Positions 38,539 to 54,054 of a DNA stretch of 64,000 nt are shown here, piece by piece. How positions within the stretch are numbered: the first letter of the stretch is position 1; each line of letters begins with the position of its first letter. The translations under genes were made by a program, and so were the position numbers. The DNA is taken from IMG/VR virus record IMGVR_UViG_3300034358_000008, positions 1 through 64,000 of that record; one strand, written 5' to 3'. The notes under the pieces were generated by a model, which did no database searches, had not been told where the DNA came from, and was given only the letters and a program-made list of their open reading frames with translations.

Positions 38539-38934
38539 TTAGCTCAGCGAGCCAATCAATTTATCCCCTAGGAATAACTGTAACATGTAACCGTTCCAAG
38601 TCCTGACAGATGGTTTCCAGTATGATCGGTGATTAGAACCACCCATTGCGTCACTTGCACTATGTACTCGCCATTTACCCATCAATGTGTCTTCAAGCAT
38701 TACCCGCATTTGTTCACGGGTACGCGTGCAATCTCCCAGAAGGTTTTCACGAGTATATACTTCGGCTTCCATTAGGTACAGGTTAATGAGATCTTGCGGT
38801 GGTTGCATAACCTGGTCAGCTATGGATAGACTCCGAGCCGTTACCTTTTGCACATTCTTCAGTGCGCTCTCAGCAGCTTTACGTTCACCGTGCATACGAG
38901 CAATGTTGTTCTTAAGTGTTTCTAGTTTACGCAT
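38539..38934 (-). CDS. Hypothetical coiled-coil protein (true start probably 38934)
   Basis: GAGGA SD before MRKLETLK; the longer listed ORF runs through a terminator. Confidence 0.65.
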   Translation of the reverse strand: MRKLETLKNNIARMHGERKAAESALKNVQKVTARSLSIADQVMQPPQDLINLYLMEAEVYTRENLLGDCTRTREQMRVMLEDTLMGKWRVHSASDAMGGSNHRSYWKPSVRTWNGYMLQLFLGDKLIGSLS

Positions 38935-38960
38935 TGTATTTTCCTCTAAGACGGAATAGA

Positions 38961-39246
38961 ACCCTACCCGAAGGTAGGGTCTAAGGACGAGTTTACTGTT
39001 TCGCTTCAGCCCATGATACCTTGGGGAAGGGTGCTCTAATATCATCGAGTAGATGGACCTAGTGCCTGAGTCGTCAGGTGTTCAGTCTATTCGGGGTACG
39101 GGCCTTCGACTTTCCTGATACTCTCTTATTCCGACTTGTCAGAGAGCGTCACGGGACATTATTTAATCTCAACTACCTACAGTCTGTGGCCCTAGTCTGA
39201 GGGGATTGGGGGCAAGTAGTTGGAAGAGCAGGACTGTTAGTCTTAC
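38961..39246 (-). ncRNA. Candidate structured ncRNA (about 270-285 nt including the terminator)
   Basis: Starts at the ATAGTATGTA motif, has several stems, and ends at a cUUCGg terminator (38961-38980). Confidence 0.65.
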
Positions 39247-41554: not shown

Positions 41555-41630
41555 TGGCACGCACCCCAAGAGTCGAACTCGGAACCAACTGCTTTGGAGG
41601 CAGCTGCTCTGCCAGTTGAGCTAGGCACGT
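41555..41630 (-). tRNA. trnW: tRNA-Trp (CCA)
   Basis: 76-nt cloverleaf; anticodon loop CTCCAAA; T-loop TTCGACT; encoded CCA. Confidence 0.93.
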
Positions 41631-41641
41631 ATTAATTCTTT

Positions 41642-41651
41642 TACATACTAT
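41642..41651 (-). promoter_or_regulatory. ATAGTATGTA late-type (TATG) promoter motif
   Basis: Lies 11 nt upstream of tRNA-Trp; same 10-mer at 39244, 42878 and 51187. Confidence 0.65.
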
Positions 41652-41959
41652 TACTTAGCGAGTAAACTTTTCACGTAAGCTTCCCATTCAAACACTGTAA
41701 AGATAGTCCTGAGTAGGTCACACGTTGATACACCATTTACATAGTTGATATGTAAAGTCTTTAACGAGTGAGCTGGTGTGATGTATGTTAAATTGGAATC
41801 GTATATATCATGCTTCACCAACAACCCATTGCATACATTACCTCCTTCGCTACAGAGGTATGTGATATGATGCCGTCTCTCAACGCCGGTCTCTTCGCAA
41901 TCTGCAACTGCATGATTTGATATTGTAATCATGTCTCTTTTACAACATGGACACTTCAT
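41651..41959 (-). CDS. Small Cys-rich putative zinc-binding protein
   Basis: MKCPCCK...C...C....C pattern. Confidence 0.6.
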   Translation of the reverse strand: MKCPCCKRDMITISNHAVADCEETGVERRHHITYLCSEGGNVCNGLLVKHDIYDSNLTYITPAHSLKTLHINYVNGVSTCDLLRTIFTVFEWEAYVKSLLAK

Positions 41960-42199: not shown

Positions 42200-42275
42200 T
42201 GGCTCCATGACCTGGACTCGAACCAGGGACCACACCGTTAACAGCGGTGGGCTCTACCAACTGAGCTATCATGGA
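42200..42275 (-). tRNA. trnN: tRNA-Asn (GTT)
   Basis: 76-nt cloverleaf TCCATGA...TCATGGA-G-CCA; anticodon loop CTGTTAA. Confidence 0.95.
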
Positions 42276-42717: not shown

Positions 42718-42802
42718 TGGTGGAGAGACAAGGATTCGAACCTTGGAAGAATTAACGCCGGATTTACAGTCCGGTCCCTTTGAGCCGCTCGGGAATCTCT
42801 CC
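42718..42802 (-). tRNA. trnY: tRNA-Tyr (GTA)
   Basis: 85-nt class II cloverleaf; anticodon loop CTGTAAA; GGTTCGAATCC; encoded CCA. Confidence 0.95.
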
Positions 42803-42877: not shown

Positions 42878-42887
42878 TACATACTAT
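42878..42887 (-). promoter_or_regulatory. ATAGTATGTA late-type promoter motif of the tRNA-Tyr operon
   Basis: Same 10-mer; about 78-nt leader to tRNA-Tyr. Confidence 0.65.
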
Positions 42888-42920
42888 TGCAACAATTGTA
42901 TTCTTTTACAACGACTTACA

Positions 42921-50275: not shown

Positions 50276-50316
50276 CGTCATAAAGCCCCTCCTTTACGGA
50301 GGGGTCTTATTTCGTC

Positions 50317-51058
50317 TTACATCGAGATAGGGATAGACCAGCTCGATGGAGGTTCAATCGTTTCACGGGTGAAGTTACATGTAATCAGAGTACGGTCGTT
50401 ACACTTGACTGAGATTGACGTGATACCCATACCTTGGTCTTTGATACCGTACACATGCTTAACGTCTGGGTGGCTGTTGTGGAGGTTTACCAGTAGTTGT
50501 TGCCATGTAATACCAGCGTCACCCAATAACAAACGGATGCTATCTACGATCTTTTCATTGCGAGTCATTTTTGTAATCCTTCTATTGTAAATGTGTGACG
50601 TACTTGAATTTCATTGTTAGTACCTTTGAATATCCATGTAAACTCAGTCTCACTCGGTGTAAGCTTTCGCTTAACCACTATGATCCGAGCAACACCGGTG
50701 CACTTAGCTTTCACTACCGGTAAGATATCTGCCAAGCAGTCGTCGTAGATGCCTTGTTGTAAGGCTAATCGATCTTCTTCTATAACTAGCATACGGTACG
50801 GTCCGAATGCCACTGACAGTATGCTTGCAGTACCGCGCGTTCACCGTTATGTCCTTTGAACAACCATGTGAGTAGTTCACCAAACTGCGGTAGTCCAGCT
50901 GCGTCTTCACCGATAAAGGTTTTATTACGATGTACCATGGTCAAGGTCTTAACACCTGAACATTCTTGTAGGATGTCCCGATTAACATCTGGATATGAAT
51001 TTGTTGCATGTTCGTATCCCCAGATTTGTAGCAGTCTGTCTTCTGTTATGATTTTCAT
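50317..51058 (-). other. Three small hypothetical CDS (50317-50568, 50565-50813, 50786-51058)
   Basis: Overlapping minus-strand ORFs. Confidence 0.6.
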
Positions 51059-51085
51059 TTTGTACGCCTTTTTAGTTAAAAGCAA

Positions 51086-51189
51086 AATAAAGTCCTCCCC
51101 GAAGGGAGGAGCTTTACCAACCCACAAACCAACACTAAAGGAGAACCATCATGCAATCCACAATGGAGTAACGTTATCGCTTCCGTTAC
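51086..51189 (-). ncRNA. Candidate ~105-nt sRNA with an anti-SD segment
   Basis: ATAGTATGTA motif at 51187-51196, 5' hairpin, UUCUCCUUUA, and a cUUCGg terminator with U-tract. Confidence 0.6.
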
Positions 51190-51210
51190 ATACTATTACA
51201 ACAAAGTATG

Positions 51211-52374
51211 TTAATCTAGGAAGTCGACTTCGAATTCTGCTTGTTCATTGGAGGTGTCCAAAGCGTTAACCATGTACTGGTTGTTATCCACTTCTTGAGG
51301 ACTGGTTTGGTTTGCAGCAAGATCGAGATATTCGGTCATGTAAGGGAGTGGGTTCTTCTCAGGCCATTCCAGTTCAAAACCAGTAACTTCCAAGAACTCA
51401 GCGTAGTGAGCTTCAGTCAGTTGACCTTTATGGCCAGTGAAGATACCAGCAGCATTACCATTGAACAGGACCCATTGGATCATCTTCTTCAGTGTCACAC
51501 CCGGCAGTTCACGACCTTCAGAGAACAGGTACATCAACCAACGAACTTCCGACATCAGAACTTCCCAATACAACTTGGTGCATTCTTCTTTGGTTTGTTC
51601 GTATGCAAGACGTCCACGTTCCGTTTTAAGCAGGGCTTTGATTACTTCCTGACCGAACTGTGCATGGATCTCGAACTCGTCGATAGCGATCTTCTGGACA
51701 CCCATAACGATAGGTTGGAAGCGACCCATCTTACCGAAGGCGAAGGTCACAGCAAACGAAGCCATGAACTGAACACGTTCTAGGTAGTACAGAGCCATGA
51801 AGAACTTGAAGATCTTGTTGTACAAGTCTTGATCGTTCGGGATAGTACCACAAGCGTAAGCATGGGAAGCATCATGTGCCTCACCCATTACTTTAGCTAC
51901 TGTCACCAGACGCTCTTGGGCTTCTTGTACTTTCAGAATCTCATCCAGAATAACCTGTGGATTCTTAAACGAGTTACGCACGATCTCTGAGTAGGTCAGA
52001 GCGTGCAGGTTCTCGTTGGAGTTGATCAGTACGTAGCCTGCCCACACACGGGAGTCAGTCATTACTGGACCAAGGATGTTTACGATAGCACGGGATGCAG
52101 TAGCGTCAGCTTCCCATTGCCATGCCAGAGTCTTGATCATCATCTCGTAAGAAGTACGGTCACACGTTTCAAACTCGTGGAGACAGTCAGCATACGGGAA
52201 TTCATTCTCATCCCAATCCATCATCTTCAAACGTTTGTACAGGTTGAAGAGGATCGGGTGATGGTTGTTGATAGAATCGAACAGGCCCGGCTCCTGACCC
52301 AGAATGATCTCGTTGGAATCGTAGTCGGACTTGTTAGCGTTAAAGATTTTAATCGGGAGATCTACGTTGGACAT
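51211..52374 (-). CDS. nrdB: Ribonucleotide reductase class Ia beta subunit
   Basis: Diiron and radical residues: EAD, ENLHALTY, LERVQF and DEFEIH. Confidence 0.93.
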   Translation of the reverse strand: MSNVDLPIKIFNANKSDYDSNEIILGQEPGLFDSINNHHPILFNLYKRLKMMDWDENEFPYADCLHEFETCDRTSYEMMIKTLAWQWEADATASRAIVNILGPVMTDSRVWAGYVLINSNENLHALTYSEIVRNSFKNPQVILDEILKVQEAQERLVTVAKVMGEAHDASHAYACGTIPNDQDLYNKIFKFFMALYYLERVQFMASFAVTFAFGKMGRFQPIVMGVQKIAIDEFEIHAQFGQEVIKALLKTERGRLAYEQTKEECTKLYWEVLMSEVRWLMYLFSEGRELPGVTLKKMIQWVLFNGNAAGIFTGHKGQLTEAHYAEFLEVTGFELEWPEKNPLPYMTEYLDLAANQTSPQEVDNNQYMVNALDTSNEQAEFEVDFLD

Positions 52375-52454: not shown

Positions 52455-52462
52455 TATATTAC
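52455..52462 (+). promoter_or_regulatory. Early promoter motif TATATTAC
   Basis: Exact motif, divergent from nrdB. Confidence 0.7.
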
Positions 52463-52497
52463 TGTTGGGAGATACTTACCTTAAAGGAGTTTTGAAA

Positions 52498-54054
52498 ATG
52501 AGTTTTCGTAAGGGTAGTGGTGCGATCATATTCTTAAGTATGGATCGCATGCTGGACAACTGCTTCTTCAGTCGTCCGGTACGTTCGTTCTATTACACCC
52601 ATGTGATGTTGTCGAACATCAAAAATGATTCTAAGGTACAAGACGCAGAGAAGCGTCTGCGCCGTAACTCGACTATCCAACAAATGACTGTACGTGGTCA
52701 CATGGTTGATCGCGATGGTTACTTCAAGTGGGTGAAGAAGACTTCCCCAATGGACTACGCCTTTAAACCAACCCAAGAACAACGTCAGTCATTTGAAGCA
52801 ATCGGCCTACCATTAGTGAGTTTTACATGAAGAAAATACACCCTGCGAAAGTAACCCGCAAGTCGTTCCATAATCAACGTAGCCATGAAGCTGCTCTTTA
52901 TGCCGTTGAGATCATTAACCACATGATCCATCGGGCGAGTCAAGGTGACATCATTTTCGAATACGAGAATCTGGTTAAACCTAACTTCGAAGCGGAGTTC
53001 TTCGGCAACGGGACGTTCGCTGGTCTGTTTCTGCGTGACGGTGAGAACTGTCGTGTCCAGATCATCGGCGATGAAACCGATCCTGACAGTGGTTTGATCT
53101 ACTGTACCAAACGCAATATCCGCGAATACTTCAAACTGTGGCGTGTGGCTAAAATCGTCAACGTCAACAAAGTAACTGATCTTACCAAATAAAGGAGTAA
53201 CCCCATGAACAATACTTGCCAAGTGTCTAAGATGATGGATATTCATCGTGACGTAGTTCCAGTTCATCCATCGACCCTTTCTATGGCTGGACACATTGAA
53301 AACATCCAGCAGACGCTTAAAGGCGTTACCTGCGAAGTGATCAATGATGAAGACATCATCCCTGATGATACCCCAGTTAAAGCAGAGATCGTCATCGATC
53401 CTCTTGATCTGGGTGCACATCGCCAACACATCCTCGATCTGTTGCAACGTCGTTCTGCGATGTTGAGAAGCACTCAACAGTTCGTGTGGTTCACCTTCCG
53501 TAAAGAAGCCGATGGTGGTGTGTACTTAAGCTGGCCTGTTGCTGGTTATCAGCATCTGCCTTCACGCATCATTGCTCGGGATTCTCGCGTTGTCCAGGCT
53601 AGTCGTCGACTTAGCAACCGGGTGCACATCAAAGCCGTTACTGTGATCGGGGCTATCCGTACCTTCGATAGCTACTTCCCATGGATCAAAGCCAAGTACG
53701 AGGTTTAAGATGTCGATGTGTCCTAAAGCTGATCAGATGGAAAACGGTCTTAAGGCTATTATCAATGAACTCATGGGTTTAGTCTGGGTAGATGCTGGTG
53801 TTAATATACCGGCAATGAAGATCTGGGAAGAGGATAAAGAAATCGAAGTTATCCCAATCGATCGTGCAGCGGGGAACTACCAGATTGACATGCGCGTCGG
53901 TCAGAAACACCTCAGTTTCGGATGGGATACTATCCGTGATATATCTGGTACCTGTGGGGTATATAAGTACGACTGGGGTGACTGTAATGTCAGCGAGTTG
54001 GCTATTGCAGCCGGCTTGGTCCTGACGTACTATGGTCACGCAATGGCTGAGTAA
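52498..54054 (+). other. Four hypothetical CDS (52498-52830, 52827-53192, 53205-53708, 53710-54054)
   Basis: Coupled ORFs inserted between nrdB and nrdA. Confidence 0.7.

What the first reader, a model, noticed from the sequence alone, without database searches (positions are those of the whole stretch)
51086..51196. Candidate late sRNA with an anti-Shine-Dalgarno seed and an in-window target
The predicted transcript (51189 to about 51086) has a 5' hairpin GUAACG/CGUUAC, then CAUGAUGGUUCUCCUUUA, a U/G-rich tract and a terminator. The seed is complementary to an SD-plus-start region. It pairs about 16 nt, with small bulges, to TAAAGGAGTAACCCCATG (53190-53207), the RBS of early gene 53205-53708. 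A late sRNA that shuts off early or host translation is plausible. The + strand reads as SD plus the minigene MQSTME*, an alternative explanation.
Basis: partly seen in the sequence, partly recalled or inferred. Interest (0 to 1): 0.68.

Follow-up and report, generated by a model that had tools for sequence, protein, structure and literature searches.

The report
Conserved jumbo-phage small RNA after nrdB
A structured small RNA gene of about 105 nt lies just after the ribonucleotide-reductase gene of this Pseudomonas jumbo phage.

Summary
The window is the first 64 kb of a 324,912-bp phiKZ-like Pseudomonas jumbo phage, close to 201phi2-1 and Viktualia. It is more than chance.

- **Conservation:** the unit is single-copy and syntenic in at least eight related phages or contigs, and it is more conserved than nrdB synonymous sites.
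- **Structure:** an 18-nt unpaired core (51144-51127) is invariant. The 5' hairpin and the terminator keep their pairing through compensatory changes.
- **Promoter:** the hairpin starts at the G of a TATG start motif. The promoter type recurs before this phage's tRNA genes, so it looks middle-class rather than purely late.
- **Known relative:** a diverged copy in a 309-kb phiPA3-like phage links the family to the 141-nt phiKZ RNA upstream of PHIKZ302, which has been detected by northern blot.
- **Plus-strand minigene:** rejected.
53190-53207 ranks 56 of 1,493, and its pairing is mostly generic Shine-Dalgarno plus AUG.
- **Other targets:** no conserved phage target emerged, and no Pseudomonas species genome holds the exact 18-mer.

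Verdict: a real, conserved small RNA gene whose target is unknown. Expression in this phage could not be tested.

The parts
51190..51222 (-). Promoter region. An A-rich stretch and ATACT (51209-51205) are followed 8 nt later by ATAGTATG (51196-51189). It begins about 3 nt after the nrdB stop codon (51213-51211).
   Evidence: ATAGTATGTA occurs 5 times in the 325-kb genome, about 0.6 expected, always on the minus strand. Two copies lie directly before tRNA-Trp and tRNA-Tyr, with the same (A/T)TAC(T/A)-N8-9 spacing. TATGTA is invariant in all homologues. In phiKZ the late motif is TATG with G as +1, and the middle motif is A-rich plus TACT.
51168..51189 (-). 5' hairpin starting at +1: GUAACG, a 10-nt loop, CGUUAC.
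   Evidence: It is kept in 8 of 8 homologues, and 3 of its 6 pairs change on both sides (AU to GC, CG to UA, GC to UA). The same TATG-G plus hairpin start is seen at a published phiKZ small RNA 5' end.
51146..51166 (-). Second hairpin: CCAUUGUG, GAUUG, CAUGAUGG. Its 3' arm is the CAUG that reads as ATG on the plus strand.
   Evidence: MFE fold. The base CCAU.../...AUGG or GUGG recurs in the MFE folds of L006 and L010, and by my reading in L007 and L014; the MFE fold of L014 differs. It is not clear in the 201phi2-1 subgroup, so support is only moderate.
51127..51144 (-). Invariant 18-nt core UCUCCUUUAGUGUUGGUU, made of the anti-Shine-Dalgarno-like UCUCCUUUA followed by GUGUUGGUU.
   Evidence: It is identical in 8 distinct homologues whose nrdB synonymous sites are only 60-76% identical. 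The anti-SD half has a predicted unpaired probability of 0.56-0.86. It occurs once in the genome.
51083..51115 (-). Intrinsic terminator: extended stem around UCCUCCC-UUCG-GGGAGGA, then CUUUAUUUUG. The predicted 3' end is near 51083-51086.
   Evidence: It is called on the minus strand only. Two stem pairs change on both sides across homologues.
51211..52374 (-). nrdB (ribonucleotide reductase small subunit), the gene directly upstream. The RNA may also be made as its 3' UTR.
   Evidence: Pfam PF00268 E 3.5e-19 and phrog_86 E 6e-82. The TATG lies 21-32 nt after the nrdB stop in six genomes.
50789..51058 (-). First of three small genes of unknown function that follow the terminator. The start codon lies 25 nt after the scripted end of the element, which sits within the terminator tail.
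   Evidence: ORF list. No Pfam or PHROG match. It is not homologous to the genes that follow the RNA in phiKZ or in L065. Its start region pairs only weakly with the core, -8.1 kcal/mol.
53190..53207 (+). I do not consider it part of the system.
   Evidence: Rank 56 of 1,493 with the 23-nt core. TAAAGGAG is a recurrent ribosome-binding-site word in this phage.

Best explanation
This is a small non-coding RNA gene of the phage.

How it is made: a phage RNA polymerase promoter of the TATG type starts transcription at G 51189, right after the nrdB stop codon. The promoter combines a TACT box with ATAGTATG, the same class that precedes this phage's tRNA genes. Transcription ends at the intrinsic terminator near 51085, giving an RNA of about 105 nt. 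Read-through from nrdB could deliver the same sequence as a 3' UTR.

Its shape: a 5' hairpin at +1, a second weaker hairpin, an exposed invariant 18-nt stretch, and the terminator hairpin.

How it most likely works (inferred, not shown): the exposed UCUCCUUUA(GUG...) stretch base-pairs in trans with the Shine-Dalgarno region of one or more mRNAs, most probably host mRNAs, and blocks ribosome loading.

What is shown here: the anatomy, conservation, covariation, single-copy synteny and the apparent relationship to a phiKZ RNA seen on northern blots.

What is inferred: the start site, the promoter class, trans action and the kind of target.
For: 1. Homologues exist in 201phi2-1, Viktualia, a 320,858-bp close relative and five further contigs. 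Each of the five records searched whole (three full-length genomes, two fragments) has one strong copy, on the nrdB strand.
2. Covariation: 94.9% of cells are paired, 5 pairs change on both sides, 0 of 500 shuffles reach the score, and slid controls give 39-53% paired.
3. Selection: element identity is 0.68-1.00 against 0.60-0.76 at nrdB synonymous sites. 201phi2-1 and L063 are 108/108 identical in the element while their nrdB third positions are 75% identical. The 18-mer is invariant.
4. Promoter: ATAGTATGTA occurs 5 times against about 0.6 expected, and two copies lie before tRNAs. Viktualia uses AATACTATGTA both before its tRNAs and before its copy of the element.
5. A published phiKZ small RNA (270595-270485, minus strand) starts within 1 nt of a TATG G followed by a hairpin.
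6. A covariance model finds a full-length homologue in a 309,208-bp phiPA3-like genome (36.5 bits, E 7e-6, the top hit of that genome). That copy aligns with the phiKZ PHIKZ303/302 spacer. There, the distance from TATG-G to the terminator is 141-144 nt, matching the published 141-nt RNA seen on northern blots.
7. It is not a dedicated leader. The downstream genes are unrelated in three lineages. In 201phi2-1 no annotated gene follows; the next annotated gene converges.
8. The anti-SD half is predicted to be mostly unpaired. A UCCUU-type motif recurs in the diverged homologues.
Against: - The table of 201phi2-1 small RNAs is not held.
- No target was found. Nothing stands out in the phage's own genome. 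The best ortholog-consistent candidate is within permutation expectation, p = 0.28.
- The exact 18-mer is in no Pseudomonas species genome.
- The published reading of the phiKZ relative is a 5'-UTR fragment made by premature termination. In most genomes a gene follows the terminator by 24-67 nt.
- The 3' tail UUUAUUUU is the generic tail of this phage's terminators, so it says nothing about Hfq.
- phiKZ itself scores only 19 bits with the model, so that link rests on the intermediate sequence.
Confidence: 0.55

Rival explanations
1. It is a cis-acting leader or attenuator. The promoter serves the three small downstream genes, and the terminator aborts most transcripts conditionally. The short RNA is then a by-product, or both a by-product and a regulator.
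For: This is how the phiKZ relative and 28 similar phage RNAs were interpreted: a terminator in the 5' UTR, two transcript lengths and a dominant short form. In the window and in five homologues a same-strand gene starts 24-67 nt after the terminator. The 201phi2-1 study also describes many start-then-stop units.
Against: - The downstream genes are unrelated between lineages, and none is annotated downstream in 201phi2-1, although its element is identical to that of L063.
- No conserved alternative (antiterminator) fold was seen.
- The core pairs only weakly with the downstream start regions, -7 to -13 kcal/mol against a genome mean near -12.7.
Confidence: 0.27
2. It is only the 3' untranslated region and terminator of nrdB, with no promoter and no function of its own.
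For: It starts 21 nt after the nrdB stop and ends at the first terminator after nrdB.
Against: - An inert spacer would not be more conserved than synonymous sites, would not hold an invariant 18-mer, and would not keep a hairpin by compensatory change.
- In Viktualia and in the phiPA3-like and phiKZ genomes other genes lie between nrdB and the element.
- The TATG motif is invariant.
Confidence: 0.08
3. The functional strand is the plus strand: a strong ribosome-binding site and a translated minigene (MQSTME) or leader peptide.
For: TAAAGGAGA plus a start codon at 4-9 nt is present in all Serwervirus-type copies.
Against: - The peptides are 6, 9, 10, 10, 18, 20 and 76 aa long, with different frames and sequences.
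- The phiPA3-like copy has no AUG.
- The ATG is the complement of the 3' arm of hairpin 2.
- The terminator tail is on the minus strand only.
- Plus-strand virion-gene transcription meets a terminator at 50285-50305, before this site.
- In 201phi2-1 a second hairpin carrying the phage-typical tail stands between gp456 and the site.
Confidence: 0.03

Closest known systems
phiKZ 141-nt intergenic small RNA upstream of PHIKZ302 (TU237, ended by terminator T131; Putzeys et al. 2024, PMC10914365)
   Same: - It lies on the same strand as nrdB, a few kb downstream.
- It starts at TATG-G followed by GUAG and a 5' hairpin.
- It ends at a CCUCCCUUCGGGGAGG terminator with a CUUUAU tail, and it carries pyrimidine-rich UCCUU/CUUCC motifs.
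- It aligns with the phiPA3-like homologue that the covariance model links to the window's element.
   Different: - phiKZ lacks the 18-nt core. Its pyrimidine motifs sit in hairpin loops, and it is longer (141 against about 105 nt).
- The direct model score is weak: 19 bits, E 0.0045 in 12 kb.
- Two genes separate it from nrdB.
- Its function is unknown, and it was described as a 5'-UTR product.
phiKZ small RNA 3'UTR_PHIKZ298 / 5'UTR_PHIKZ297 (270595-270485, minus strand)
   Same: It has the same build: TATG-G start, 5' hairpin at +1, terminator, about 110 nt, and a position next to tRNA genes on the minus strand.
   Different: No sequence similarity to the window's element. It shows the architecture only.
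3'-UTR small RNAs with their own promoter (MicL and DapZ of enterobacteria; from my own knowledge)
   Same: The RNA gene is nested at the 3' end of a protein gene and shares that gene's terminator. A short conserved single-stranded seed lies upstream of the terminator.
   Different: Those RNAs are host-encoded, Hfq-dependent and have proven targets. Here the promoter lies just after the stop codon, and neither Hfq dependence nor a target is known.
Pyrimidine-rich (UCCC-motif) small RNAs such as RsaE/RoxS of Firmicutes, and the prophage small RNA DicF (from my own knowledge)
   Same: They work in the way proposed here: exposed C/U-rich motifs pair with Shine-Dalgarno regions and block initiation.
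   Different: There is no homology. This is an analogy of mechanism and was not tested here.
201phi2-1 small RNAs found by ONT-cappable-seq (Poppeliers et al. 2024, PMC11512511)
   Same: The study covers the same genus and reports 11 small RNAs, 3 of them intergenic. The homologue at 308,610-308,719 (minus strand) may be one of them.
   Different: The paper's text names only sRNA005, upstream of gp277. The table with coordinates is not held, so identity with a reported RNA could not be checked.

Membership tests
phiKZ TU237-type jumbo-phage small RNA | TATG start with a 5' hairpin at +1 | tested here: met
   TATGTA is invariant and the hairpin covaries. phiKZ and the phiPA3-like copy begin TATGTAGAA plus a hairpin.
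phiKZ TU237-type jumbo-phage small RNA | Sequence or structure homology to the phiKZ RNA | tested here: inconclusive
   The model built from Serwervirus-type copies gives 36.5 bits (E 7e-6) in the phiPA3-like genome but only 19.1 bits in phiKZ. phiKZ and the phiPA3-like copy align over shared blocks. The link is therefore transitive.
phiKZ TU237-type jumbo-phage small RNA | Position downstream of nrdB on the same strand | tested here: met
   The distance from nrdB is 21-32 nt in six genomes, 332 nt in Viktualia, about 1.2 kb in L065 and about 2.4 kb in phiKZ.
phiKZ TU237-type jumbo-phage small RNA | A discrete abundant short transcript during infection | not testable with these tools
Evidence is published only for phiKZ.
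Trans-acting base-pairing small RNA (Hfq type) | Conserved accessible seed | tested here: met
   The 18 nt are invariant and the anti-SD half is 0.56-0.86 unpaired.
Trans-acting base-pairing small RNA (Hfq type) | A conserved complementary target | tested here: not met
   No target is conserved in the phage genomes (p = 0.28; one search is at chance). No Pseudomonas genome holds the exact 18-mer. Shorter host matches could not be scanned.
Trans-acting base-pairing small RNA (Hfq type) | Binding to Hfq or another chaperone | not testable with these tools
   The tail UUUAUUUU is the generic tail of this phage's terminators.
5'-UTR attenuator or riboswitch | A conserved regulated gene downstream and mutually exclusive folds | tested here: not met
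   The downstream genes are unrelated, and none is annotated in 201phi2-1. RNAalifold shows no alternative helix.
Any Rfam family | Score at or above the family's gathering threshold | tested here: not met
   The best match is rnk_pseudo at 24.3 bits against a threshold of 55, and it is mostly the terminator.
Small ORF, leader peptide or type I toxin on the plus strand | Conserved reading frame and peptide | tested here: not met
   Lengths range from 6 to 76 aa, frames shift, and L065 has no AUG.

The most novel reading that the evidence does not exclude
The family may span several genera of nucleus-forming jumbo phages (Serwervirus-type, phiPA3-type, a third lineage seen in L070/L080, and phiKZ). 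Its only shared single-stranded feature is a UCCUU-type anti-Shine-Dalgarno motif.

It might therefore not be a gene-specific regulator. It could be a general binder of ribosome-binding sites, or a mimic of the 16S rRNA 3' tail. Exported from the phage nucleus, it would tilt cytoplasmic translation, for example against host mRNAs or a class of phage mRNAs with strong AAGGAG sites.
Probability: 0.12. Interest if true: 0.8.

Novelty: new member of a known kind. Interest (0 to 1): 0.5.

Why it matters
Small RNAs of virulent phages are known almost only as transcript peaks, and none from a phiKZ-like phage has a known function. This element is a well-defined comparative case.

- It has eight or more homologues with an invariant 18-nt seed.
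- It shows clear covariation.
- It has a likely relative that was seen on northern blots.

That is the kind of input comparative target prediction and antisense knock-down need. It also suggests that the phiKZ RNA upstream of PHIKZ302 is a conserved, movable gene rather than a leader of that particular gene. It ties a promoter variant (TACT box plus ATAGTATG) to non-coding RNA genes, namely tRNAs and small RNAs, in this phage. For annotation, it flags a probably spurious 39-aa protein call in Viktualia.

Tried and rejected
The pairing is real but ordinary: rank 56 of 1,493, and 252 of 1,493 with the longer region.
2. **Shut-off of early genes.** Start regions next to TATATTAC early promoters are more complementary than controls in this phage (p = 0.002). 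They are not in 201phi2-1 (p = 0.99) or Viktualia (p = 0.23).
3. **Any target in the phage.**
   - The whole-genome duplex scan has a continuous tail and nothing stands out.
   - 10-mer matches are at the shuffled-target level.
   - The ortholog-combined ranks are no better than permutations.
   - The best leads are the ribosome-binding sites of a phiKZ gp28-like vertex protein and of a tail protein. Neither is significant.
4. **Autoregulation of nrdB.** Pairing to the nrdB start region is -20 kcal/mol here but only -10 and -13 in the relatives.
5. **Cis sequestration of the downstream gene's ribosome-binding site.** The pairing is weak everywhere.
6. **Exact 18-mer in bacterial genomes.** There are 11 hits, none in Pseudomonas, about the chance number.
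7. **Metagenome scan.** It gave 37 exact hits, of which only two are homologues. One of the 35 unrelated hits came from a gut metagenome. I took no contig for human and followed up none of the 35.
8. **Genome-wide scan of Pseudomonas for shorter matches.** This was not possible. No relatives are drawn for a virus record, no taxon name is accepted, and no Pseudomonas is among the control genomes.
9. **Rfam.** No family matched.
11. **Supplementary tables.** Neither transcriptome paper's tables are held.

Full report
**Where the window lies**

The window is the first 64 kb of a single 324,912-bp virus record. Its DNA matches Pseudomonas phages 201phi2-1 and Viktualia at about 80% identity over the ribonucleotide-reductase small-subunit gene. 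It is therefore a phiKZ-like jumbo phage close to the genus Serwervirus.

The finding lies in a 152-bp spacer on the minus strand. On one side is nrdB (51211-52374; Pfam PF00268, phrog_86). On the other is the first of three small genes of unknown function, starting at 51058. Plus-strand virion genes end at a terminator at 50285-50305. Plus-strand early-type genes begin beyond 52455.

**The observation**

- TATG with its G at 51189.
- A hairpin GUAACG / CGUUAC at 51189-51168.
- The stretch CAUGAUGGUUCUCCUUUA.
- A U/G-rich tract.
- A terminator called only on the minus strand (stem 51110-51093, tail CUUUAUUUUG).

The RNA folds better than shuffles, z = -2.7. The plus strand does read as a Shine-Dalgarno sequence plus MQSTME. 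The pairing to 53190-53207 exists at -16.4 kcal/mol.

**Is it more than chance?**

Yes.
- **Homologues.** A distant BLAST and an exact search for the 18-mer TCTCCTTTAGTGTTGGTT found homologues in 201phi2-1, Viktualia, a 320,858-bp close relative and five further viral or metagenomic contigs. The other exact hits are unrelated sequences, in about the number expected by chance.
- **Copy number.** A covariance model built from eight distinct sequences finds one strong copy per record. The element is also single-copy in the window's genome.
- **Position.** In six genomes the TATG lies 21-32 nt after the nrdB stop. In Viktualia one small gene intervenes.
- **Conservation.** The element is more conserved than nrdB synonymous sites in every pair. 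201phi2-1 and its relative L063 are identical over 108 nt although their nrdB third positions are only 75% identical.
- **Invariant core.** The 18-nt core (51144-51127) is invariant.
- **Covariation.** The 5' hairpin and the terminator keep pairing through changes on both sides. 94.9% of cells are paired and five pairs carry double changes. None of 500 shuffles reaches the covariation score. Slid controls drop to 39-53% paired.

**Which strand?**

The evidence points to the minus strand.
- The U-rich terminator tail is on the minus strand only.
- The plus-strand ORFs are 6, 9, 10, 10, 18, 20 and 76 codons long, with no common frame or sequence.
- The homologue in the 309,208-bp genome has no AUG after its Shine-Dalgarno-like complement. 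From its length I take that genome for phiPA3.
- The conserved CAUG is the 3' arm of a second hairpin whose 5' arm is the conserved UCCAU.
- In 201phi2-1 the element lies between convergent genes. No annotated same-strand gene follows it, and a further hairpin stands between gp456 and the element.

**Start site and promoter class**

- In phiKZ the non-virion RNA polymerase starts at the G of TATG.
- The phiKZ middle promoters add an A-rich stretch and a TAC(T/C) box roughly 22-24 nt upstream.
- In this genome ATAGTATGTA occurs five times, about 0.6 expected, always on the minus strand.
- Four of the five copies have an (A/T)TAC(T/A) box 8-9 nt upstream. Two of them lie directly before tRNA-Trp and tRNA-Tyr.
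- Viktualia uses AATACTATGTA before two tRNAs and before its copy of the element.
- In 201phi2-1 a tRNA gene is reported to be driven by a middle promoter.
- A published phiKZ small RNA (270595-270485, minus strand) begins within 1 nt of a TATG G that is followed by a hairpin.

So the start at 51189 is well supported by analogy. The class looks like middle-with-TATG rather than purely late. The 201phi2-1 subgroup has its TTTACC box closer to the TATG, which I cannot explain.

**Relation to known RNAs**

- The model finds a full-length, diverged copy in the phiPA3-like genome, about 1.2 kb downstream of nrdB: 36.5 bits, E 7e-6, the best hit of that whole genome.
- That copy has the TATGTAG start, a 5' hairpin followed by UCC, the core UUCUCCUUGUUGUGUUG, a similar terminator and two extra hairpins.
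- Its extra hairpins and its start align with the spacer between PHIKZ303 and PHIKZ302 of phiKZ.
- Putzeys et al. describe there a small intergenic transcript of 141 nt, ended by terminator T131 and confirmed by northern blot.
- From the TATG G to the terminator tail I count 141-144 nt.
- A third lineage (L080, L070) has the same build with a conserved GAUCCUUCUGU.

The window's element thus appears to be the Serwervirus-type member of a small RNA family. One member of that family has been detected experimentally. The phiKZ link is transitive, because the direct model score is only 19 bits. No Rfam family fits.

The 201phi2-1 transcriptome paper reports 11 small RNAs, three of them intergenic, but its table is not held. 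I could not tell whether this one is among them.

**What does it do?**

The core is predicted to be largely unpaired. It begins with UCUCCUUUA, the complement of UAAAGGAGA. The simplest mechanism is base pairing with ribosome-binding sites. I tested every candidate I could reach.

| Candidate target | Result | Calls |
|---|---|---|
TAAAGGAG is a recurrent ribosome-binding-site word here (24 copies, about 9 of them real start regions) | 58, 59 |
| Early-gene start regions | Enriched for complementarity in this phage (p = 0.002), not in 201phi2-1 or Viktualia | 92 |
| Whole-genome duplex scan | Nothing stands out | 37 |
| 10-mer matches | At the level of shuffled targets | 54 |
| Ranks combined over 353 ortholog triplets | No better than permutation (p = 0.28) | 84 |
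| Best leads: a phiKZ gp28-like vertex protein and a tail protein | Not significant | 84-87 |
| nrdB's own start region | Pairing not conserved | 55 |
| Start regions of the genes that follow the element | Weak pairing | 95 |
| Exact 18-mer in 185,579 species genomes | 11 hits, none in Pseudomonas | 32 |

A scan of host genomes for shorter matches was not possible with the tools. The target is therefore unknown. If there is a specific one, it is more likely to be in the host.

**Cis or trans?**

The published reading of the phiKZ RNA is a 5'-UTR product of premature termination. In most genomes a gene does follow the terminator. However, those genes are unrelated between the window, phiKZ and the phiPA3-like genome. 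None is annotated downstream in 201phi2-1, where the element is nonetheless perfectly kept. No alternative fold is conserved.

I therefore favour an autonomous RNA gene that acts in trans. I keep about a quarter of the probability on a cis role. Both roles could hold together.

**Limits**

- No transcript data could be obtained for this phage.
- The start site, the promoter class and the mechanism are all inferences.
- I encountered nothing that I took for human sequence.

Noticed in passing
window 38955-39244, minus strand: A second candidate non-coding RNA of about 290 nt. It has the same promoter type (ATACT, 9 nt, ATAGTATG with G at 39244), a 5' hairpin, no ORF, and a terminator near 38960-38990 just before the next gene's start at 38934. 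Part of it is nearly identical to the leader upstream of tRNA-Leu in Viktualia, but this genome has no tRNA-Leu there. No Rfam match.
   Followed up: partly
window 41642-41652 and 42878-42888, minus strand: The same ATAGTATGTA promoter motif lies directly before tRNA-Trp (41555-41630) and about 75 nt before tRNA-Tyr (42718-42802). The tRNA-Tyr leader also starts with a hairpin at +1. tRNA-Asn (42200-42275) has no such motif of its own.
   Followed up: partly
window 52455-52500 and 53190-53207; genome-wide: Plus-strand genes behind TATATTAC early-type promoters often use the ribosome-binding site (C/T)TAAAGGA(G/A)TTT. Of the 21 TATATTAC sites in the genome, 19 are on the plus strand.
   Followed up: partly
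window 47740 and 50296; also 227773, 246647 and 287880 of the genome: Several of this phage's terminator hairpins have the form CCCTCCCG-TAAA-GGAGGGG. They therefore contain TAAAGGAG and inflate counts of that word. They are also formally complementary to the small RNA core.
   Followed up: no
L002 2496-2615 (Viktualia PV037725.1 83528-83647, minus strand): An annotated 39-aa hypothetical protein (CDS0172) lies on top of the Viktualia copy of the small RNA. It is probably a spurious gene call.
   Followed up: no
L120 (genome 74508-75449, minus strand), outside the window: The start region of the phiKZ gp28-like vertex-protein gene (PF25614) pairs with the small RNA in all three phages at -20 to -21 kcal/mol. 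The bases flanking the seed differ in step with the target spacer (GGAGAUUC here, GGAGAGAC or GGAGAGGC in the relatives). By permutation this is not significant.
   Followed up: partly
L001 2565-2795 (201phi2-1 308677-308907, plus strand): In 201phi2-1 the plus-strand frame behind the Shine-Dalgarno-like complement stays open for 76 codons, antisense to the end of nrdB. It is not annotated and not conserved.
   Followed up: no
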